Shown: positions 1 to 51,280 of the stretch, piece after piece
Numbering within the stretch: the stretch's first letter is position 1
Layout: each line of letters opens with the position of its first letter
Assembly (NCBI RefSeq): GCF_963921235.1
Contig: NC_086097.1
Span: 75,764,001 to 75,828,000, forward strand
Length of the DNA: 64,000 nt
Source of the DNA: Mobula hypostoma
Taxonomy: Eukaryota
Direction of reading: 5' to 3'
The notes under the pieces: generated by a model
What the model was told of the DNA's origin: nothing
What the model saw: only the letters and a program-made list of their open reading frames with translations
Database searches by the model: none
Program-made: the position numbers and the translations under genes

Positions 1-472
1 GGAGCCAAGAGCTGGACAGGTGATTGGCAAAGGGGATATGAGAGGATCATGGGACAGGAGGTCTGGGGAGAAAGACAAGGGAGGGAGGGGAAACAGAGGA
101 TGGGCCAGAGGTATAGTCAGAGGGACAGAGGGAGAAAAAGGAGAGTGAGAGAAAGAATGTGTGTATAAAAATAAATAACGGATGGGGTACGAGGGGGAGG
201 TGGGGCATTAGCGGAAGTTAGAGAAGTCAATGTTCATGCCATCAGGTTGGAGGCTACCCAGACGGAATATAAGGTGTTGTGCCTCCAACCTGAGTGTGGC
301 TTCATCTTTTACAGTAGAGGAGGCCATGGATAGACATGTCAGAATGGGAATGGGATGTGGAATTAAAATGTGTGGCCACTGGGAAATCCTGCTTTCTCTG
401 GCGGACAGAGCGTAGATGTTCAGCAAAGCGGTCTCCCAGTCTGCATCGGGTCTCGCCAATATATAGAAGGCC
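1..472 (-). mobile_element. Inverted copy of the PLE 3' region (GIY-YIG C-terminus and 3' UTR), running off the window start
   Basis: Reverse complement of ~1539-2010. Minus-strand ORFs LYIGETRCRLGDRFAEH and RLGSLQPDGMNIDFSNFR. Confidence 0.93.
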
Positions 473-571
473 TATTCTGGTATCTGTCCCCCACTTTTCC
501 TTCGCTACATCAACGACTGCATTGGCGCTGCTTCCTGCACGCATGCTGAGCTCGTTGACTTAATTATAAAT

Positions 572-2175
572 CCCTACTCTTAATAATTTCTCCTTTGGCT
601 CCTCCCACTTCCTCCAAACTAAAGGTGTAGCTATGGGCATCCGTATGGGTCCTAGCTATTCCTGCCTTTTTGTTGGCTTTGTGGAACAATCTATGTTCCG
701 TGCCTATTCTGGTATCTGTCCCCCACTTTTCCTTCGCTACATCGACGACTGCATTGGCGCTGCTTCCTGCACGCATGCTGAGCTCGTTGACTTTATTAAC
801 TTTGCCTCCAACTTTCACCCTGCCCTCATGTTTACCTGGTCCATTTCCGACACCTCCCTCCCCTTTCTAGATCTTTCAGTCTCTGTCTCTGGAGACAGCT
901 TATCCACTGATGTCTACTATAAGCCTATTGACTCTCACAGCTATCTGGACTGTTCCTCTTCTCACCCTGTCTCTTGCAAAAATGCCATCCTTTTCTCGCA
1001 ATTCCTCCATCTCCGCTGCATCTGCTCTCAGGATGAGGCTTTTCATTCCAGGACGAGGAAGATGTCCTCCTTTTTTAAAGAAAGGGGCTTCCCTTCCTCC
1101 ACTATCAACTCTGCTCTCAAACGCATCTCCCCCATTTCATGCACATCTGCTCTCACTCCATCCTCCCGCCACCCCACTAGGAATAGGGTTCCCCTGGTCC
1201 TCACCTACCACCCCACCAGCCTCCAGGTCCAACATATTATTCTCCGTAACTTCCGCCACCTCCAACAGGATCCCACCACTAAGCATATCTTTCCCTCCCC
1301 CCCCCCCTGCTTTCCGCAGGGATCGCTCCCTACATGACTCCCTTGTCCATTCGTCCCCCCCATCCCTCCCCACTGATCTCCCTCCTGGCATTTATCCTTT
1401 TAAGCGGAACAAGTGCTACACATGCCCTTACACTTCCTCCCTTACCACCATTCAGGGCCCCAGACAGTCCTTCCAGGTGAGGCGACACTTCACCTGTGAG
1501 TCGGCTGGGGTGATATACTGCGTGTGGTGCTCCCGATGTGGCCTTTTATATATTGGCGAGACCCGACGCAGACTGGGAGACCACTTTGCTGAACACCTAC
1601 GCTCTGTCCGCCAGAGAAAGCAGGATCTCCCAGTGGCCACATATTTTAATTCCACATCCCATTCCCATTCTGACATGTCTATCCATGGCCTCCTCTACTG
1701 TAAAGATGAAGCCACACTCAGGTTGGAGGAACAACACCTTGTATTCCGTCTGGGTAGCCTCCAACCTGATGGCATGAACATCGACTTCTCTATCTTCTGC
1801 TAATGCCCCACCTCCCCCTCGTACCCCATCCGTTATTTATTTCTATACACACATTCGTTCTCTCACTCTCCTTTTTCTCACTCTGTCCCTCTGACTATAC
1901 CCCTTGCCCATCCTCTGTTCCCCCCCCCCCCGTCTTTCTCCCCGGGCCTCCTGTCCCATGATCCTCTCATATCCCCTTTGCCAATCACCTGTCCAGCTCT
2001 TGGCTCCATCCCTCCCCCTCCTGTCTTCTCCTATCATTTTGGATCTTCCCCTCCCCCTCCCACTTTCAAATCTCTCACTAACTCTCCCTTCAGTTAGTCC
2101 TGACGAAGAGTCTCGGCCTGAAACGTCGACTGTACCTCTTCCTAGAGATGCTGCCTGGCCAGCTGCGTTCACCAA
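572..2175 (+). mobile_element. 5'-truncated Penelope-like retroelement, Neptune-type (RT + GIY-YIG endonuclease), one frameshift
   Basis: RT motifs GVAMG.RMGPSY and FLRYIDD (633-1337). Frameshift near the poly-C at ~1300. Cys-rich linker (F/C)KRNKCYTC, then GVIYCVWCSRC..LYIGET..R...EH (to 1803). Pyrimidine-rich 3' UTR ending in a hammerhead motif. Confidence 0.93.
2096..2131 (+). ncRNA. Minimal type I hammerhead ribozyme motif at the PLE terminus
   Basis: agtc CTGACGA agagtctcggcct GAAA CGTC gact. Both catalytic boxes, helix I agtc/gact and the palindromic ACGT helix III are present; helix II has a mismatch. Confidence 0.75.
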
Positions 2176-7770: not shown

Positions 7771-8261
7771 AAATTCTTAAGCCAGGCAGCATCAATAGAG
7801 GCCAATAAGCCATCAATGTCAGTCCTGATGGATGGTCTCAGCCTTAAGTATTGACTGTTTATTTCCCTCCATAGAAACTGCTTGACCTGTTGTGTTCCTC
7901 CAGCATTTTGTATGTGTTGCCCAAAATTTCCAGCATCTGAAGAATCTTTTGTGTTAAAAATTTTCATAAATTGTCATCAGAAATGACTTAAAAGAATTGG
8001 AAAATTAAGGTATATGTAAGTAATTGTGCTCCAAAGAAATATCTTGAAATTTTTTGCTGCCTTTGACACTAGATAAATAATTGAGAGCTTTATAAAGAGC
8101 AGCAATGTTACAGGCAGAAGTTATGTTTATTCTAACTAATTTGGAATAGATGAGTAGATAGAGAGGAAATATACCAAGGGGATGAAAAGCAAGAAGAGAA
8201 AAATTTAGAAGAAAAAAATCTGAGCTGAATAAGTGAAATTAGATTGATAGTAAATGCAGCA

Positions 8262-10151: not shown

Positions 10152-13100
10152 TTCAGAATCAGAATTACTTCATTGCCAGTATGTGAAACATACCAGAATT
10201 GATTGTGGTGCAGTGCAAAGCATAAAACACAGGACAATACCGTAACAGACAACACAAAAGCAACCAACAATTTACAGGACAATAGTGTAAACAGCCATGA
10301 GCAATCAACAACTAGTAGAACAGTCACATACGCAAATGTCAATAATCAAACATATGGACAGACTCAATAATAATCAACAGAACAAGGAGAGCAGGAAAGA
10401 CCGTTTAACGTATGTTGTGCAAAGACAGGATATTATATGAGTGAGTTTGTTGAGAACCTGGATAGCTACAAGCAAGAATTTTCAGAGATGATGTGTAGCC
10501 CTGGTGGTGATGGATTTGTAATGTCTGCCTGATGGAAATTTACTACGGTGAGTGGAGTCAGCAGTACTTTTTTTTTCAGCTCTTTTCTTCGCTTTGGCGA
10601 CAAACAGGTCTTTTATTGTTGGCAGAAATCATTCCTCATTTGCACTATCTTGATAGCATTAAGCTCCAAGTTGTTACGAGCACACCATGCTGCAAGACGG
10701 TATACCTCCTCTCTTTGGGAGCAGGTTACATCATTATTAGAGTTGAGGTTCACTGCAGTCGTGTCGTCCGTGAACTTTAGGATTTGTGTGTGGAGATACA
10801 GTCGTTTGTATAAAGTGAGAACAGGAGGGGTGAAAGAGCACAGCCCAGGGGAGAACCAGTGCTTATAGACACTGGATTGGTCACGTAGGAGCCCAGCCTT
10901 ACATACTGCTGTCAGGAGGTTCGTAATCTACTGATAGATACTGTAGATTACAAATGGCTGGCTTAGCTTGCTTAGTGTTGAAAGTGGAGCTAAAATCCAC
11001 AAGCAAGATCCTCACATAGGTGTTAGGGGAATCATTATGCATAACACTAAGGGGCAGAAAACGCTGGTGGGAGTTGTGTACAGGCCACCTAACAGTAGTA
11101 GTGAGGTTGGGGATGGTATTAAACAGGAAATTAGAGATGCGTGCAATAAAGGAACAGCAGTTATAATGGGTGACTTCAATCTACATATAGATTGGGTGAA
11201 CCAAATTGGTAAGGGTGCTGAGGAAGAGGATTTCTTGGAATGTATGCAGGATGGTTTTTTGAACCAACATGTCGAAGAACCAACTAGAGAGCAGGCTATT
11301 CTAGACTGGGTATTGAGCAATGAGGAAGGGATAATTAGCAATCTTGTCGTGAGAGGCCCCTTGGGTAAGAGTGACCATAATATGGTGGAATTCTTCATTA
11401 AGATGGGGAGTGACATAGTTAATTCAGAAACAAAGGTTCTGAACTTAAAGAAGGGTAACTTTGAAGGTATGAGACGTGAATTAGCTAAGATAGACTGGCA
11501 AATGACACTTAAAGGGTTGACGGTGGATATGCAATGGCAAGCATTTAAAGATCGCATGGATGAACTACAACAATTGTTCATCCCAGTTTGGCAAAAGAAT
11601 AAATCAGGGAAGGTAGTGCACCCATGGCTGACAAGGGAAATTAGGGATAGTATCAATTCCAAAGAAGAAGCATACAAATTAGCCAGAAAAAGTGGCTCAC
11701 CGGAGGACTGGGAGAAATTCAGAGTCCAGCAGAGGAGGGCAAACGGCTTAATTAGGAAAGGGAAAAAAGGTTATGAGAAAAAACTGGCAGGGAACATAAA
11801 AACTGACTGTAAAAGCTTTTATAGATATGTGAAAAGATAAAGATTGGTTAAGACAAATGTAGGTCCCCTACAGACAGAAACAGGTGAATTGATTATGGGG
11901 AGCAAGGACTGGCAAACCAATTGAATAACTACTTTGGTTCTGTCTTCACTAAGGAGGACATAAATAATCTTCCGGAAATAGTAGGGGACAGAGGGTCCAG
12001 TGAGATGGAGGAACTGAATGAAATACATGTTAGTAGGGAAGTGGTGTTTGGTAAATTGAAGGGATTAAAGGCAGATAAATCCCCAGGGCCAGATGGTCTG
12101 CATCCCAGAGTGCTTAAGGAAGTAGCCCAAGAAATAGTGGATGCATTAGTGATAATTTTTCAAAACTCTTTAGGTTCTGGACTAGTTCCTGAGGATTGGA
12201 GGGTGGCTAATATAACCCCACTTTTTAAAAAAGGAGGGAGAGAGAAACCGGGGAATTATAGACTGGTTAGCCTAACATCGGTGGTGGGGAAAATGCTAGA
12301 GTCAGTTATCAAAGATGTGATAACAGCACATTTGGAAAGCTGTGAAATCATCCGACAAAGTCAGCATGGATTTGTGAAAGTAAAATCATGTCTGACGAAT
12401 CTCATAGAATTTTTTGAGGATGTAACTAGTAGAGTGGATAGGGGAGAACCAGTGGATGTGGTATATTTGGATTTTCAAAAGGCTTTTGACAAGGTCCCAC
12501 ACAGGAGATTAGTGTGCAAACTTAAAGCACATGGTATTGGGGGTAAGGTATTGATGTTGATAGAGAATTGGTTGGCAGACAGGAAGCAAAGAGTGGGAAT
12601 AAACAGGACCTTTTCAGAATGGCAGGCAGTGACTAGTGGGGTACCGCAAGGCTCAGTGCTGGGACCCCAGTTGTTTACAATATATATTAATGACTTAGAT
12701 GAGGGAATTAAATGCGGCATCTCCAAGTTTGCGGATGACACGAAGCTGGGCGGCAGTGTTAGCTGTGAGGAGGATGCTAAGGATAGGTTAGGTGAGTGGG
12801 CGAATTCGTGGCAGATGCAATTTAGTGTGGATAAATGTGAGGTTATCCACTTTGGTGGCAAAAACAGGAAAACAGATTATTATCTGAATGGTGGCTGATT
12901 AGGAAAAGGGGAGGTGCAACGAGACCTGGGTGTCATTATACACCAGTCATTGAAAGTGGGCATGCAGGTACAGCAGGTGGTGAAAAAGGCGAATGCTATG
13001 CTGGCATTCATAGCAAGAGGATTCGAGTACAGGAGCAGGGAGGTACTACTGCAGTTGTACAAGGCCTTGGTGAGACCACACCTAGAGTATTGTGTGCAGT

Positions 13101-14280
13101 TTTGGTTCCCTAATCTGAGGAAAGACATCCTTGCCATAGAGGGAGTACAAAGAAGGTTCACCAGATTGGTTCCTGGGATGGCAGGACTTTCATATGATGA
13201 AAGACTGGATCGACTAGGCTTATACTCATCGGAATTTAGAAGATTGAGGGGGGATCTTATTGAAACGTATAAAATCCTAAAGGGATTGGACAGGCTAGAT
13301 GCAGGAAGATTGTTCCCGATGTTGGGGAAGTCCAGAATGAGGGGTCACAGTGTGAGGATAAAGGGGAAGCCTTTTAGGACCGATATGAGGAAAAACTTCT
13401 TCACAAAGAGAGTGGTGAGTCTGTGGAGTTCTCTGCCACAGGAAACAGTTGAGGCCAGTTCATTGGCTATATTTAAGAGGGGGTTAGATGTGGCCCTTGT
13501 GGCTAAAGGAATCAGGGTGTATGGAAGGAAGGCTGGTACAGGGTTCTGAGTTGGATGATCAGCCATGATCATACTGAATGGTGGTGCAGGCTCGAAAGGC
13601 CGAATGGCCTACTCCTGCACCTATTTTCTATGTTTCTATGATGTTGAAAAATATAATGAAGGCACAATTTAACAGTGCCCTTAATTGAGTGATTTGCTCA
13701 AAAAACAATCTGTAGCAGGTCAAGAAGAGGATCAGTACTGGACTTAAGGCAGGCCACCATCAGATATTCACACTACTGAAGTCAGATTGACTGGCCTATA
13801 ATCTTTAAGTCCAGTAATCTTGCCTTTCTTGGAACTGGAACTGAATCTTTCCTAACATTCTATTTTTCAAATAGTTTGTAAATGTCTTCTTGCTTCACCG
13901 AATGTATTGGGTGGATGGAAGGGAAGGGGCAGGATGGGAAGGAGGCTGAAGAAGGTGAAAGGGGTTGGAGTGAAGAGGAGATGGTATCATTGGAGTGGTT
14001 GTGAAAGGTGGGGAGGAAGTAGGGGCTTAGCATATCAAGATCAGAGGAAGTGAGAAGAGATAGATGTTGATTGTCCTTATCAAACTGGCAGTAAAGCTGA
14101 TTTTCCAAGATACGGGGAGGGGGAGACTTGGAAGCACTTCTGTTTGAAGTTGGTAAGACTGCAGGGAACTTTAGACTGCCCAGCTATTGCTCAAGTCGCT
14201 CTCAAGCTGATCCTTGTAGGTGGCTTTTGTCACTTTCAGAGCCTTATTATTGCTTACTGAATAATAAGCAAATTCTTTGA
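10152..14280 (-). mobile_element. Old Rex/Babar LINE split by the CR1 insertion (pieces ~10152-11036 and ~13641-14280)
   Basis: The minus-strand RT reads ...HYIFQHH | DSPNTYVRILLVDFSSTFNT across the CR1. Tail cagaatcagaat at ~10155. Confidence 0.7.
11037..13640 (+). mobile_element. Young 5'-truncated CR1 LINE, ORF2 (APE endonuclease + RT), inactivated
   Basis: Motifs GVVYRPP, MGDFN, SDHN, YLDFQKAFDKVPH, GVPQGSVLGP, FADDTK. Stops end at 11840 and 12898, frameshift at ~11910. Terminal (tttctatg) repeat. Confidence 0.95.
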
Positions 14281-25962: not shown

Positions 25963-26622
25963 GTCATGTTAAAATCAACTAGGCATGTCAGCTTTCAAGA
26001 TGATGACGAAGTAGTGAGGATAAATCCTCTGAAGGATGTATTGATTAGGGGCTATGAAGACTACAGACATCCTATTGTGAGAAAAAATGATTTGGAAACA
26101 GAAGTAGATTCGTATGTGTGTTTTAAGCCTGAATCTAAGAAACATGATTATGTATATCCTTCAGTGCAAGGGATGGAATCCGATTCTGTTAAAGATTCAA
26201 AGGGTTCTGTTGTATTCAAAGCACAGCCTCCCACTTCACTGAAATCAAAAAAATCCAAACGAAGGAAAGAGGACGGAGAGCGCTCTCGTTGTATATATTG
26301 TCGAGATATGTTTAACCATGAGGAGAACAGAAGAGGACAGTGTCAGGATGCTCCAGACCCGATCAAGAGGTGCATTTATCAAGTGAGCTGCATGCTGTGT
26401 GCAGAGAGTATGCTCTATCACTGTATGTCGGACTCTGAGGGAGATTTCTCTGATCCATGTTCATGTGACACTGGTGATGACAAATTCTGTTTGCGTTGGA
26501 TGGCTCTTATAGCCTTGTCTGTTTTTGCACCATGTATGTGCTGCTACCTCCCTCTAAGAGCCTGCCACCATTGTGGTGAGATTTGTGGATGTTGTGGAGG
26601 AAAACACAAAGCAGCTGGATGA
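25963..26622 (+). CDS. SPRED1: SPRED1 last coding exon: c-Kit-binding domain and cysteine-rich Sprouty-related (SPR) domain
   Basis: Acceptor tttttcag|[28 protein letters not shown]...RCIYC...[27 protein letters not shown]...CGGKHKAAG*. The C-terminus matches SPRED1, and the FAM98B neighbour supports SPRED1 over SPRED2/3. Confidence 0.98.
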
Positions 26623-31381: not shown

Positions 31382-31512
31382 CAGCATCTATTGGAAAGAG
31401 TCCTGATGAAGGGTCTTGGCCTGAAACATCGACTGTTTACTGTTTCCCATAGATGCATTTTGTGTGTTGTTTTGGATTTCCAGCATCTTTTCCAGCAATT
31501 TTCTAGTGTTTG
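31382..31512 (+). mobile_element. PLE-terminus mini-element with a hammerhead motif (31399-31434)
   Basis: agtc CTGATGA agggtcttggcct GAAA CATC gact, preceded by a short inverted copy of its own downstream sequence. Confidence 0.75.
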
Positions 31513-37916: not shown

Positions 37917-38016
37917 CACAAACACGAGGTCTCGGCCCGAAACGTCGACTGTACCTCTTCCTAGAGATGCTGCTTGGCCTGCTGCGTTCACCAGCAACTT
38001 TTATGTGTGTTGCTTG
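37917..38016 (+). mobile_element. 100-bp PLE-terminus insertion with a 12-bp TSD
   Basis: AACCTTTAGAAC at 37905-37916 and 38017-38028. Contains ggtctcggcccgaaacgtcgactg, the hammerhead 3' half only. Confidence 0.8.
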
Positions 38017-38434
38017 AACCTTTAGAACTATCTATCTCTTTGAAATTACAATATTCTAACAGAAATAAATGGTTGATTTGATTTCTAACTCGCCACTCAA
38101 ATTTTAGTTGCATTCCCTACTCTTCCCCTGCAGGAAAAAACAGTGACACTAGCAACAAATCCCCAACCCCTCCTCAGGACAGCGGCAGAACGATCCCTGG
38201 CCCCCTCATCCACAAATAAGAACAGTGGCAGTAGCATCAAAACCCCCCTACACATACAAAAAAACCACAGAGCACCCTCCTGCCAATCGGCCACAAGAAA
38301 GAAAATGCCAAAAGACTGAAGGAGTCCAATATAAAGTACAGTCAAATAATCACATAAATCTCAGAATATCGACGACATCTTTCTGTCAACATACAAGGAG
38401 AACGGCTGCTCGAACTCAGTCCCTCCATGGAGAG

Positions 38435-47900: not shown

Positions 47901-49670
47901 TTCTTTAATTTGTTTTTGCTAATTTCTTCCCATCTAGGTGACAAATGAACATTGATATTATGCAGATCTGGGTTGATAAGAGTCAGATAGAGTTCAGTCT
48001 GAACAAGTGTGAAGTGATACACTTTGAAAGATTGAATTTGAAGTTAATAGCAGGATTCTTAGCAGTGTGGAGCAACAAAGTGATCTTGTGGTAGATGTCC
48101 ATAGACTCCTTAAAGTTACAGATTGCTTAAGAAGGCATTTTGTAGGTTGGGCCTTGTTAGTTGGAAGATTGAGTTCAAGAGCCTGATGTAATACTGCAGC
48201 TCTATAAAACTCCAGCTAGGCTACACTTGGTGTATTGCCTTCAATTCTGGTCACCTCATTGTAGGATATGGAATTTTATAGAAGGTACAGAAGAGGTTTA
48301 CCAGGATGCTACTTAGATTAGAGGATGTTTCATGAGGAAAGGATGAGCAAGCTAGGAGTTTTCTCTTTGGAATGAAGGAGGATGCGAGTCAACTTGATAG
48401 GGATCTATAAGATGATAAGAGACAAAAAATGAGTAGACAGCTTGTGCCTTTTTTGCAGAGCACTAATATGAGAGGACCTACTTTTAAGGTAATTGGAAGA
48501 AATTATAAGGGGGTTTGAAAGAGATAGGGGTTTTTACACAGTGTATGTAGTGCACTGTCGGGGGTGGGGGCAGGGGCAGATGCATTAGAGACATTTAAGA
48601 TACTCATAGATGAAAGATAAAATGGAAGGATATGAGGGAGGGAGCGGTTTGATTGATCCTGACTAGGTTAAAAGATTGATACAACATTGTGGACTGAAGG
48701 GCCTTTACTGTGCTATACTGTATTACATTATCATTGATCCATAGCGACTGCTCACAAACATGAGAACATTTGCAGATGCTGGAAATCCAAAGCAACACAG
48801 ACAAAATGCTGGAGGAGCTCAGCAGGCCAGGCAAGCATCTATGGAAAAGAGTGCACAGTTGACATTTTGGGCTGAGATGAAGACTATCAGCTGAAATGTC
48901 GACTGTTCACATTTCATTCTTTCCTTGTATTGCTGAAGGTTTCATATATAATAAATGATCACAAAATAAAGTTTAAAATTCTATATAATAGACTGGTGGT
49001 TCATTATTGTCACATTCACCCACAGTGGAAAAACTTATACAGATCAATTCATTACAACAGAACATTGAGCTAGTGTCTGATAGTATAGGCAGATACATAG
49101 GGATATTTACAAAACTCTTAGATTGGAACATGCATAATAGAAAAACTGGAGGGCTATGTAGGAGGTTAGGGTTAGATTGATCTTAGAGTAGGTTATAAGA
49201 CTGGCACAGCATCATGGGCTGAATGGCCTAGACTGTGTTGCAATGTTCAATGTTCTAAAGGCTAAAACAATACTAGAGTGCAGAAATTAAGTGTTAGAGA
49301 GTGTAGTGCAGGTGGACGGTAAGGTGTAAGGTCATAGCAAGCTAAATTATGAGGTCAAGAATCCATGTTATCCTACTGGGGAACCATCCAATAGTCTTGA
49401 TAGTGTCATTGAGCCTGCTGCCAGGTGGGGGGGCGGGGTCTTTAATTATGTTGGCAACTTTACTGAGGCCGTGAGAAATATAGATAGAGGAGGATACAAA
49501 GATAAAAACTGGTGACGGTCAAGGTGATATAATAAATTTCTTTAGCCTCCTGAGTAAGTAAAGGCGCAGGTGAGCTTCCTTGACTGCAGCTTCAACATGG
49601 TTGAATCAGGGCAGATTAAAGGTGATGTTCGCTCCTAGGATCTCGAAGCTCTCAACAACTCTTGACCTGA

Positions 49671-49811
49671 CAACAGGAATTCTGCAGATGCTGGAAATTC
49701 AAGCAACACACATCAAAGTTGCTGGTGAACGCAGCAGGCCAAGCAGCATCTATAGGAAGAGGCGCAGTCGACGTTTCAGGCCGAGACCCTTCGTCAGGAC
49801 TAACTGAAGGT
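49671..49811 (-). mobile_element. 141-bp PLE-terminus mini-element with a 13-bp TSD
   Basis: ACTCTTGACCTGA at 49658-49670 and 49812-49824. The insert is near-identical to 2087-2172 plus the full 3' tail. Confidence 0.92.
49766..49801 (-). ncRNA. Intact minimal type I hammerhead ribozyme motif
   Basis: Minus strand: agtc CTGACGA agg-gtctcgg-cct GAAA CGTC gact. Helix I 4 bp, helix II agg/cct, palindromic ACGT helix III. Predicted cleavage after the GUC, between 49770 and 49769. Confidence 0.82.
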
Positions 49812-49889
49812 ACTCTTGACCTGAGCACCGTTTATGAAAACAAGCGCAGTATCATCGAACTGAAATTTTAAATAGAATTGAGACCCAGT

Positions 49890-50390
49890 GCTCCGCTCTG
49901 TTACCTTTGAGTCTGAAACGAGGAGAGTCTGCCCACCGCAGCACCTTCCAACCAGCAGGGGCCGCGACCGTGGGAGGACGGCGTAGTTGCAGCGCGTAGC
50001 TCCGCTCGGCCACTCGTCGTTGGACAAAGGAGCGGGAGGAGGTTTGAAAGGAGCCGGTGGGGTGAAGTGACGGGGGGGGTGGCGAGCTCGGCGAAGGCCT
50101 AGTCTTGTTTCTGAGCCGCTGCTGCAGTGCACTCGAGCTTGTTGGTCGCGCCATGGAGGCGGACATCCTGGACACACTCGATGCGCTAGGGTGAGTGGCT
50201 CCGCTATTTGCAGATCCCTTGCACCGCCGCTCCGCACAAGTGTCCGGTGGGGACCCCTTTCTCTTCTGCTCACACCTCAACTTTGCGGCGGGAAACTCAC
50301 GGGGTTCACGACTTTTGCAGCAGAGGAATGCTGTTTGGTTCAGTGTTAGTGCCGACCTCGACACGAGTATGTATTGCTCTTGTTTCCGCC
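49890..50390 (+). promoter_or_regulatory. FAM98B: CpG island / promoter and first exon of FAM98B
   Basis: The only dense non-repeat CpG/GC-rich tract in the window. It surrounds a strong Kozak start gcgccATGG at 50153. Confidence 0.88.
50153..50190 (+). CDS. FAM98B: FAM98B coding exon 1
   Basis: MEADILDTLDALG(G), donor GG|gtgagt. Matches human FAM98B MEGDVLDTLEALG. Confidence 0.93.
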
Positions 50391-51167
50391 CCTCCATCCT
50401 CTCTCCCCCCCACTCTGTCCCCCCATCATCTTCCCCCCAAAACTCATCCATTACCCCTTTCCCCCACACTTTCTCCCTCTGCCCATTTCCCACTACAAAT
50501 GTAGTCTGGCTCAGAGTTTCTTCAGTGGTTTGTGCTCCAGTTTGTAACATCTGCAGTCTCCATGTCTTATAGAAGTTGCTTCGTTATGATATATAACCTT
50601 TGCCTTTATGAACAGTTAAAACCAAAAAAAATCACAACCATTAAAAATCACAACCATTCAGAGATTCTGTAGTGTAAAAGCTTCTGTCAGCACCAAGCCA
50701 CCTCTGCCTCCTATTATTGGCCTATGTGGTAAGGCTTTGCTAGATCCATCACTGTCAGCTTCCTGCAAAGTACCAGCCAAAATTCCAGTGAAGAGATCCT
50801 GCATCATGGTAGAGTCCTGTGAAGGTGAATGTCATCGCGTGGGAATGGAGAGCAAACCAAGTCCTACTCACAAAGCAGGTCAGGGGGAAGCTTTAACAGC
50901 TGTGAACCATTCCACTTTGCTTAGCCAACATCAGGATTTTTTTCAAGACCAGGTATAAAAACTTACAAGAATCAAATAATTGAATTATTTTAATTATTGA
51001 CAGTTATCAAAAATACTTATGAACAAAATGGAAAGCACTTAATTGTATGGTACAACCTTGCATTACTGAGGAGTTGCACTCCAGAAAAACTGTCCAAATC
51101 ATGATTTTCCATAATATGAACCCTTCATTGAAGTAGGCAACATTTACTGTTTTACTTTTTCCCCTTC

Positions 51168-51280
51168 AGAAGCATCAACTGTTTGTTTATTTCCATAGAT
51201 GCTGCCTGACCTGCTGAGTTCCTCCAGCATTTTGTGTGTATTGCTCTGGATTTCCAGCATCTGAAGAATCTCTTGTTTAT
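51168..51280 (+). mobile_element. PLE terminus copy truncated within the hammerhead
   Basis: gaagcatcaactg...catagatgctgcctgacctgctgagttcctccagcattttgtgtg...ccagcatctgaagaatc. Confidence 0.7.

What the first reader, a model, noticed from the sequence alone, without database searches (positions are those of the whole stretch)
49658..49824. Intact hammerhead-ribozyme mini-retroelement inserted antisense at the edge of the FAM98B promoter
Seen: a 141-bp insert (49671-49811) with a perfect 13-bp TSD (ACTCTTGACCTGA). It consists only of the PLE terminus, starts ~10 nt 5' of the best-preserved hammerhead in the window (minus-strand agtc-CUGACGA-agg/ccu-GAAACGUC-gacu), and keeps its CpGs. It lies ~340 bp upstream of the FAM98B ATG and points away from the gene. 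Known: Penelope-like elements carry minimal type I hammerheads with a palindromic helix III that usually need dimerisation, and CpG-island promoters transcribe divergently. Inference: upstream-antisense transcripts of this promoter would carry the ribozyme in sense orientation. That could give a self-trimming promoter-antisense RNA, or a host-promoter-driven source of a SINE/retrozyme-like element mobilised by the PLE enzyme.
Basis: partly seen in the sequence, partly recalled or inferred. Interest (0 to 1): 0.75.

Follow-up and report, generated by a model that had tools for sequence, protein, structure and literature searches.

The report
Truncated Penelope retrocopy near FAM98B promoter
This is a real, recent 141-base insertion of only the tail end of a Penelope-like jumping gene, carrying that family's usual tiny hammerhead ribozyme motif, next to the FAM98B promoter of a ray; it looks like an ordinary dead copy, and nothing shows that it is transcribed or cuts itself.

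Summary
A 141-bp insert (49671-49811) lies between two perfect 13-bp copies of ACTCTTGACCTGA. A DNA contig of a sister species, about 1.8% diverged, joins 49657 directly to 49812. That is an exact empty site with a single copy of the 13-mer.

The insert is the 3' end of a very abundant Penelope-like element (PLE) family. Another window copy, 93% identical, lies about 300 bp downstream of a reverse-transcriptase/GIY-YIG reading frame.

The minus strand carries the published "minimal" PLE hammerhead: all core bases, the extra base after A9, a palindromic ACGU in place of helix III, and a 4-5 bp helix I. There is one departure: pair 10.1-11.1 is G·U, not the conserved G-C. Rfam models do not detect the motif.

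The functional reading has no support:
- RNA contigs start at about 50025 (FAM98B exon 1), and no RNA covers 49859-49980.
- RNA laid on the insert comes from other copies.
- There is no second hammerhead nearby to form a dimer.
- The catalytic fold is predicted to be far less stable than competing folds.
- Published lone minimal hammerheads show no detectable cleavage.

Verdict: an ordinary, lineage-specific, 5'-truncated PLE retrocopy. This scan has already reported the same kind of insert elsewhere in this genome. Low interest.

The parts
49658..49670 (.). Left copy of the 13-bp target-site duplication (ACTCTTGACCTGA)
   Evidence: Sister species B has a single copy at the empty site (X5 record 19).
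49671..49811 (-). 141-bp 5'-truncated retrocopy of the 3' terminus of a Penelope-like element (hammerhead motif plus about 95-nt tail)
   Evidence: 93-94% identical to copies at 2087-2174 and 37928-38018, and 67-82% to about 9 older copies. Absent from organism B.
49765..49802 (-). Minimal type-I hammerhead motif. Helix I 49802-49798 / 49769-49765; CUGACGA 49797-49791; extra A 49790; helix II 49789-49778 (G10.1·U11.1); GAAA 49777-49774; palindromic ACGU 49774-49771; C17 49770; predicted cut between 49770 and 49769
   Evidence: Read from the sequence. Pattern search gave 3 hits against 0.06 expected. Features compared with PMC4209133. No Rfam match.
49671..49764 (-). Tail downstream of the hammerhead, ending at the family's usual 3' end
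   Evidence: Older copies end at the same point in the alignments. Contig flanks beyond 49670/49675 are heterogeneous (agreement 0.44-0.55), as expected at a true element end.
49812..49824 (.). Right copy of the 13-bp target-site duplication
50025..50190 (+). FAM98B-like exon 1 (ATG at 50153; splice donor GT at 50191)
   Evidence: RNA contigs of 1161 and 1072 nt begin at 50025 and 50039 and leave the genome at the donor. Downstream exons match Pfam DUF2465/FAM98 in profile order.
49825..50350 (.). CpG-rich promoter region (CpG o/e 0.88 against 0.27 for the window). The insert abuts its upstream edge
318..2174 (+). Reference copy showing what the insert derives from: broken PLE reading frame (RT motifs in 570-1334, GIY-YIG in 871-1800), about 296-bp C/T-rich untranslated stretch, hammerhead motif 2100-2127, partial tail to 2174

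Best explanation
The insert is a dead-on-arrival, extremely 5'-truncated retrocopy of the 3' end of a young Penelope-like element (PLE) subfamily.

Shown:
- It entered this lineage after the split from a sister species about 1.8% diverged.
- It made a 13-bp target-site duplication.
- It ends at the family's normal 3' end.
- It begins 13 nt upstream of the hammerhead's CUGA box, whereas a longer copy of the same subfamily (c2k, 2087-2174) continues upstream to an RT/GIY-YIG reading frame.

Inferred:
- The PLE enzyme nicked the target with a stagger, started reverse transcription at the internal initiation site in the tail, and copied only about 140 nt. Either the template RNA ended there or the enzyme stopped at the structured, GC-rich hammerhead region.
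- The hammerhead is a passenger motif. As a lone copy without a helix III it is not expected to cut.
- The insert has no demonstrated effect on FAM98B.
For: - Exact empty site in organism B (X5 record 19: 49657 joined to 49812). The flanks differ at 21 of 1170 aligned bases.
- Perfect TSD.
- About 12 family copies in 64 kb. Summed contig depth over the insert is about a million times that of the unique flanks.
- The 93%-identical copy at 2087-2174 follows a frame with RT motifs and a GIY-YIG domain. Pfam gives E=0.007. Relatives in Mobula hypostoma (87%), Hypanus sabinus and Rhincodon typus include proteins carrying RVT_1, HTH_animal and GIY-YIG.
- Contig loose ends at 49808-49810 continue into the PLE upstream sequence seen at 2074-2099, so the insert is truncated and not a complete unit.
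- RNA: zero depth over 49859-49980 and mRNA contigs starting at 50025/50039.
- Folding, 60-nt context: hammerhead-competent monomer -7.7 against MFE -17.3 kcal/mol. Double hammerhead -12.9 against -34.6 for two folded monomers. A hairpin CCUUC...GAAGG sequesters the CUGACGA box.
- Literature: single minimal PLE hammerheads showed no detectable cleavage, and dimers showed little (PMC4209133). In Anolis Poseidon the hammerhead was not needed for insertion, reverse transcription starts internally, and no RNA-seq reads end at the cut site (PMC11167929).
Against: - All core nucleotides are present, so activity cannot be excluded by sequence alone.
- The RNA evidence is assembled contigs, which carry no strand or end information and drop rare RNAs. 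Unstable promoter-antisense RNAs would probably be missed. An antisense start inside 49812-49858 would not show in the empty bins.
- Three of the window's copies (this one, 31399-31488 and 7818-7945) begin within 4-13 nt of the CUGA box. The 5' end may therefore not be a random truncation point.
Confidence: 0.86

Rival explanations
1. One reading: divergent transcription from the FAM98B CpG-island promoter runs through the insert on the minus strand. The hammerhead then trims this promoter-antisense RNA, possibly after pairing in trans with another hammerhead-bearing RNA.
For: - The geometry is right. The motif is on the minus strand, about 214 bp upstream of the mRNA 5' end and at the edge of the CpG-rich region.
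- The core nucleotides are complete.
- Family RNAs with the same ACGU palindrome are plentiful in the RNA contigs.
Against: - No RNA depth over 49859-49980 in two RNA sets in which FAM98B exon 1 is covered at depth 45-91.
- No listed RNA contig is locus-specific.
- There is no second intact hammerhead within reach. The nearest same-strand relic, at 48771-48877, has lost its core.
- An intermolecular helix III would have only 4 bp, and the catalytic fold is disfavoured by more than 20 kcal/mol in prediction.
- Pair 10.1-11.1 is G·U, not the conserved G-C.
- Lone minimal hammerheads are inactive in vitro (PMC4209133).
- The insert is absent from the sister species, so no conservation argues for a role.
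Confidence: 0.05
2. One reading: the insert is, or could become, a host-promoter-driven master copy of a SINE- or retrozyme-like element mobilised by the PLE enzyme.
For: - The tail next to the hammerhead is where PLE reverse transcriptase binds and initiates in the one system tested (PMC11167929). A transcript containing this insert would therefore carry the likely recognition region.
- Short hammerhead-plus-tail copies recur in the window and, according to earlier notes of this scan, across the genome.
- A 2026 preprint derives animal non-LTR retrozymes from PLE terminal repeats.
Against: - No transcription was detected.
- The insert shares its diagnostic bases (C at core position 7, the TCAGTTAG leader, the GTTCACCAGCAAC tail variant) with the copy attached to a PLE reading frame. 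This points to the autonomous element as the source.
- The bases that set it apart from most laid family contigs (for example CG at 49763-49764) are in the minority there: C>T at 49763 in 98% of organism B depth.
- It is a single unit, not a tandem array, and retrozymes are defined by tandem arrays.
Confidence: 0.02
3. The insert matters as DNA, not as a ribozyme. It adds 141 bp with 6 CpGs and possible factor-binding sites about 214 bp upstream of the transcription start, and so shifts FAM98B promoter activity in this species.
For: Its position is promoter-proximal, and it abuts the CpG-rich region.
Against: - No evidence either way. mRNA contigs start downstream of it in this species.
- It is lineage-specific and young, and most such insertions are neutral.
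Confidence: 0.05
4. The direct repeat and the motif are chance features or an assembly artefact.
For: None found.
Against: The exact empty site in another species, the family membership and the pattern statistics exclude this.
Confidence: 0.01

Closest known systems
Minimal hammerhead motifs (min-HHR) of metazoan Penelope-like elements (Cervera & De la Pena 2014, PMC4209133; Lunse, Weinberg & Breaker 2017, cited in PMC6765202)
   Same: Type-I layout; CUGANGA and GAAA boxes; an extra nucleotide between A9 and 10.1; no helix III loop, with palindromic 15.1-16.1 (ACGU); short 4-5 bp helix I; location near the end of a PLE; mostly found as single dispersed motifs from truncated copies.
   Different: Pair 10.1-11.1 is G·U here and not the conserved G-C. 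Helix II has 4 pairs (two of them wobbles) and not the 6-8 described for several families. Cleavage is untested.
5'-truncated PLE insertions made by internal initiation of reverse transcription (Poseidon of Anolis carolinensis, PMC11167929)
   Same: The hammerhead lies about 100-200 nt from the 3' 'tail' where reverse transcription starts. 5' truncation shortens the product. The hammerhead is not needed for insertion.
   Different: The target here is not obviously AT-rich. This ray subfamily has no ATG inside the CUGANGA box (C at position 7). The mechanism is inferred here, not assayed.
Animal non-LTR retrozymes (tandem hammerhead repeats giving circular RNAs; preprint 10.64898/2026.07.22.740005)
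   Same: Derived from PLE terminal repeats, and they carry type-I hammerheads with a weak helix III.
   Different: Retrozymes are tandem arrays of two or more units, so that two hammerheads can dimerise and release a unit. This is a single unit flanked by a target-site duplication.
Schistosoma Sm-alpha / Sj-alpha SINE-like hammerhead elements (reviewed in PMC6765202)
   Same: A short non-autonomous retroposon that carries a hammerhead.
   Different: Those have their own internal promoter and an active canonical hammerhead with a helix III. No promoter or activity is shown here.
Promoter upstream antisense transcripts (PROMPTs/uaRNAs) of CpG-island promoters (general knowledge)
   Same: The position and orientation would place the motif in such a transcript.
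   Different: No such transcript was detected at this locus.

Membership tests
PLE minimal hammerhead (min-HHR) | Conserved core: C3 U4 G5 A6 N7 G8 A9 ... G12 A13 A14 A15.1 ... U16.1 H17 | tested here: met
   CUGACGA at 49797-49791, GAAA at 49777-49774, U16.1 at 49771, C17 at 49770. The pattern occurs 3 times against 0.06 expected.
PLE minimal hammerhead (min-HHR) | One unpaired nucleotide between position 9 and 10.1 | tested here: met
   A at 49790, present in all window copies that keep the core. The feature is listed in PMC4209133.
PLE minimal hammerhead (min-HHR) | Highly conserved G10.1-C11.1 pair | tested here: not met
   G at 49789 faces U at 49778 (a G·U wobble). The copies c38k and c9k have C there. 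The site is a CpG, and other copies carry the TG or CA decay forms.
PLE minimal hammerhead (min-HHR) | No or minimal helix III, with palindromic 15.2-16.2 allowing dimers | tested here: met
   ACGU at 49774-49771 directly precedes C17.
PLE minimal hammerhead (min-HHR) | Short helix I (4-5 bp) flanking the core | tested here: met
   UAGUC (49802-49798) pairs with GACUG (49769-49765): 4 Watson-Crick pairs plus 1 G·U.
PLE minimal hammerhead (min-HHR) | Lies in the terminal repeat of an element encoding RT plus GIY-YIG endonuclease | tested here: met
   The sister copy at 2100-2127 lies 296 bp after a frame with RT motifs and GIY-YIG. Homologues carry RVT_1, HTH_animal and GIY-YIG.
PLE minimal hammerhead (min-HHR) | Self-cleavage at the predicted site | not testable with these tools
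   Only thermodynamic prediction was possible. The catalytic fold is disfavoured.
Rfam hammerhead families (Hammerhead_1, _3, _II, HH9, HH10) | Score at or above the family's gathering threshold | tested here: not met
   No match in the window at gathering score and none at E<=10 in 49500-50000. This is expected, because the models require a helix III hairpin.
Retrotransposed insertion (target-primed reverse transcription) | Target-site duplication and a precise empty site in a relative | tested here: met
   13-bp TSD. The organism B contig lacks exactly 49658-49811.
Non-LTR retrozyme | Two or more head-to-tail units, each with a hammerhead | tested here: not met
   A single unit between TSDs, with no tandem copy in 49300-50200. 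The nearest relics have lost the core.
Promoter upstream antisense RNA | Minus-strand transcript starting upstream of the sense start site and crossing the insert | tested here: inconclusive
   Zero RNA contig depth over 49859-49980 in two runs. Contigs carry no strand and miss rare, unstable RNAs.
FAM98B gene | FAM98 (DUF2465) domain exons in order, beside SPRED1 | tested here: met
   Four downstream exon pieces match PF10239 at profile positions 2-42, 42-89, 86-154 and 151-177. A Sprouty-domain exon lies upstream at 25966-26622. Assignment to paralogue B rests on SPRED1 synteny recalled from human 15q14 (my own knowledge).

The most novel reading that the evidence does not exclude
In this ray lineage a fresh PLE end-fragment has placed a complete hammerhead core into the upstream-antisense transcript of a housekeeping CpG-island promoter. 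The transcript would then be cut (perhaps in trans with the many family RNAs), or would serve as a host-driven template for the PLE enzyme. That would be a natural example of a promoter-antisense RNA processed by a ribozyme.
Probability: 0.04. Interest if true: 0.55.

Novelty: new member of a known kind. Interest (0 to 1): 0.14.

Why it matters
As it stands it matters little. It is one more truncated copy among a very large number of Penelope-like element ends in a ray genome, of a kind described since 2014.

Two things are useful:
- The exact empty site in a sister species shows that this PLE subfamily was active very recently in this lineage. It also gives a clean presence/absence marker next to FAM98B.
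- The insert is a convenient natural test case. It has unique flanks and a complete core beside an active promoter. It could be used to ask whether lone minimal hammerheads ever cut in vivo.

If promoter-antisense transcription and cleavage were shown, it would be a new way for a ribozyme to act on a host transcript. Nothing here points that way.

Tried and rejected
- Rfam covariance models found no hammerhead hit at gathering score or at E<=10 locally. The two weak hits, mir-4742 and Tombus_3_IV, are noise. This does not count against the motif, because the models need a helix III hairpin.
- RNA evidence: both run searches returned only assembled contigs, with no raw stranded reads. Strand, starts and cleavage ends could therefore not be read. 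The single read-laying run gave no locus-specific RNA on the insert.
- Organism C (X9): a contig stops aligning at 49815, right at the insert boundary, but only 34 unaligned letters follow. An empty site there is suggested, not shown.
- I tried to read the family-wide base at position 11.1 (49778) from laid contigs. It is not among the listed differences, and 17 rows were not shown. Whether U was inherited or arose after insertion stays open.
- Pfam did not recognise the RT piece 570-1334, and the GIY-YIG match is below Pfam's cutoff. The PLE assignment therefore rests on motifs read, the Atlas neighbours and the homologues' domain sets.
- Papers with quantitative data on G·U at 10.1-11.1 were not found in the held library. 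Lunse et al. 2017 is not held.
- Rejected: CpG retention as evidence of promoter protection, and chance or assembly artefact.

Full report
**1. Observation**

Reading 49400-50400 and a script confirm a 141-bp stretch, 49671-49811. It is flanked by two identical 13-mers, ACTCTTGACCTGA, at 49658-49670 and 49812-49824. The repeat finder reports the same pair.

The decisive check came from laying public data on 48700-50500. In organism B, one 1866-nt DNA contig (X5, record 19) aligns to 49812-50500 with record positions 687-1374. It continues without a break at record positions 1375-1866 onto 49657-49177. Organism B holds about half of the stretch's sampled words, and its contig differs from the window at 21 of 1170 aligned flank bases. 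Organism B therefore lacks exactly 154 bp, the insert plus one copy of the 13-mer. That is a textbook empty site. The insertion and its target-site duplication are real, and they arose after the two lineages split.

In a third organism (X9), a contig stops aligning at 49815, but too little follows to call an empty site.

**2. What the insert is**

BLAST of the insert against the window finds about a dozen relatives. Two are young copies at 93-94% identity (2087-2174 and 37928-38018). The older ones are at 67-82% identity. Alignments show that the older copies end where the insert ends, so this is the family's 3' end. Summed contig depth over the insert is about a million times that of the unique flanks, in DNA of two other species and in RNA. 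The family is therefore very abundant.

The young copy at 2087-2174 gives the identity.
- Upstream of it lie stop-free frames with reverse-transcriptase motifs (570-1334) and a GIY-YIG endonuclease (871-1800).
- Pfam sees the GIY-YIG only weakly, at E=0.007.
- The Atlas neighbours carry HTH_animal plus GIY-YIG.
- The homology search returns proteins of Mobula hypostoma (87% identity), Hypanus sabinus and Rhincodon typus. Relatives among them carry RVT_1, HTH_animal and GIY-YIG.

That is the Penelope-like element (PLE) architecture. It is followed by a 296-bp C/T-rich untranslated stretch, the hammerhead motif (2100-2127) and the tail. The host is evidently a ray; earlier notes of this scan call it a devil ray.

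The insert shares subfamily markers with this ORF-linked copy: C at core position 7, the TCAGTTAG leader and the tail variant. That copy continues upstream where the insert stops. Contig loose ends at 49808-49810 also continue into that upstream PLE sequence. The insert is therefore a 5'-truncated copy that starts 13 nt before the CUGA box.

**3. The hammerhead**

On the minus strand the motif reads as follows:
- helix I: UAGUC (49802-49798) pairs with GACUG (49769-49765)
- CUGACGA: 49797-49791
- one extra A: 49790
- helix II: 49789-49778, with a CUCG loop
- GAAA: 49777-49774
- ACGU: 49774-49771
- C17: 49770, so the predicted cut is between 49770 and 49769.

Cervera and De la Pena list four features that recur in PLE minimal hammerheads (PMC4209133). 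They are consensus families, a nucleotide between 9 and 10.1, a conserved G10.1-C11.1 pair, and palindromic 15.2-16.2. They also describe a short helix I. All are met here except one: 11.1 is U, giving G·U. The site is a CpG in copies that keep C, and other copies carry the TG or CA decay forms. The U may therefore be CpG decay or an inherited variant; I could not decide which.

A relaxed pattern for the motif hits three times in the window against 0.06 expected, always in this family, and this copy is the best preserved. Rfam models find nothing, as expected for a motif without a helix III hairpin.

**4. Would it cut?**

Folding predictions, in a 60-nt context:
- The hammerhead-competent monomer is worth -7.7 kcal/mol against an MFE of -17.3.
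- The MFE fold contains a hairpin (CCUUC...GAAGG) that buries the CUGACGA box.
- A double hammerhead is worth -12.9 kcal/mol against -34.6 for two folded monomers.

No second intact hammerhead lies nearby; the nearest same-strand relic, at 48771-48877, has lost its core.

Published tests point the same way:
- Single minimal hammerheads showed no detectable cleavage, and dimers showed little (PMC4209133; review PMC6765202).
- In the one PLE reconstituted in vitro, hammerhead mutants inserted normally, and no RNA-seq reads ended at the cut site (PMC11167929).

**5. Is it transcribed?**

Two runs of the same species behave as RNA. Contigs of 1161 and 1072 nt begin at 50025 and 50039 and leave the genome at the exon 1 donor, GT at 50191. 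This places the mRNA 5' end about 214 bp from the insert.

Both runs have zero depth over 49859-49980. The listed RNA contigs on the insert differ at 6-13 of about 80 bases and diverge at its edges, so they come from other copies.

Limits of this evidence:
- Contigs have no strand or end information and drop rare RNAs.
- An antisense start within 49812-49858 would escape the empty bins.

**6. Context**

- Downstream exon pieces match the FAM98 domain in profile order.
- A Sprouty-domain exon, as in SPRED1, lies upstream at 25966-26622. This fits FAM98B by synteny recalled from human.
- The CpG-rich region runs from about 49825 to 50350 (o/e 0.88 against 0.27 for the window), and the insert abuts it.
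- The insert's six CpGs (o/e 0.65) are matched by the two other young copies far from any CpG island (o/e 0.75 and 0.79). CpG retention therefore reflects youth, not promoter protection.

**7. Mechanism**

Shown: a PLE end fragment inserted with a 13-bp duplication in one lineage.

Inferred, by analogy with Anolis Poseidon: staggered nicking by the GIY-YIG endonuclease, reverse transcription starting at the internal site in the tail, and termination after about 140 nt.

In this window three copies (this one, 31399-31488 and 7818-7945) begin 4-13 nt before the CUGA box, and three more begin 10-25 nt after its first base, inside or just past the motif. Earlier notes of this scan report the same pile-up genome-wide. 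This suggests a preferred stop, or a template 5' end, near the structured motif, and not a separate self-propagating lineage.

**8. Comparison and verdict**

The insert works like, and is, a truncated PLE copy carrying the known minimal hammerhead. It fails the retrozyme definition, because it is not a tandem array. It also fails the Rfam hammerhead thresholds, and it departs from the PLE motif at one conserved pair.

This scan has already described the same kind of insert elsewhere in this genome, including a 124-bp one with a 13-bp duplication.

The functional proposals are geometrically possible but unsupported. Novelty: a new member of a known kind. Interest: low.

Noticed in passing
window 1-370 (-) and 1643-2007 (+): The end of the PLE reading frame and its downstream untranslated stretch occur twice in inverted orientation. 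1-207 matches 1804-2007 at 93.7% on the opposite strand. This is a head-to-head or fold-back arrangement of a partial PLE cut by the window start.
   Followed up: partly
window 31399-31488, 7818-7945, 49671-49811; also 37928-38018, 48771-48877, 51191-51277: The 5' ends of family copies cluster around the hammerhead. Three begin 4-13 nt before the CUGA box and three begin 10-25 nt after its first base, while five others run on into the PLE reading frame. This suggests a preferred reverse-transcription stop or a template 5' end there.
   Followed up: partly
window 49788-49810 (-): The insert's first 24 nt can form a 9-bp hairpin (CCUUC/GAAGG plus GUUA/UGAC) that buries the CUGACGA box. The pyrimidine-rich leader of other copies shows similar complementarity. 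It could be an off-state of the ribozyme, or merely a by-product of the C/T-rich leader.
   Followed up: partly
window 50065-50072: RNA contigs of the same species and a contig of organism C read the G run in the FAM98B 5' untranslated region one base shorter. Organism B reads it two bases shorter. This is a homopolymer length polymorphism or an assembly slip.
   Followed up: no
window 10968-13549 (+): A LINE fragment with an endonuclease (Exo_endo_phos_2, E=2.5e-11) and a reverse transcriptase (RVT_1, E=1e-29), unrelated to the PLE family.
   Followed up: no
window 25966-26622 (+): An exon encoding a Sprouty domain (E=2e-31), consistent with the last exon of SPRED1 upstream of FAM98B.
   Followed up: no
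window 49127-49248 and 49493-49657: DNA contig depth is hundreds to thousands of times the unique level. The sequence just upstream of the insertion site is therefore itself older repeat, and the PLE fragment landed at the border between repeat and unique promoter DNA.
   Followed up: no
window 51191-51277 (+): An old copy of the same PLE tail lies in FAM98B intron 1 in the sense orientation. It has lost the hammerhead core.
   Followed up: no
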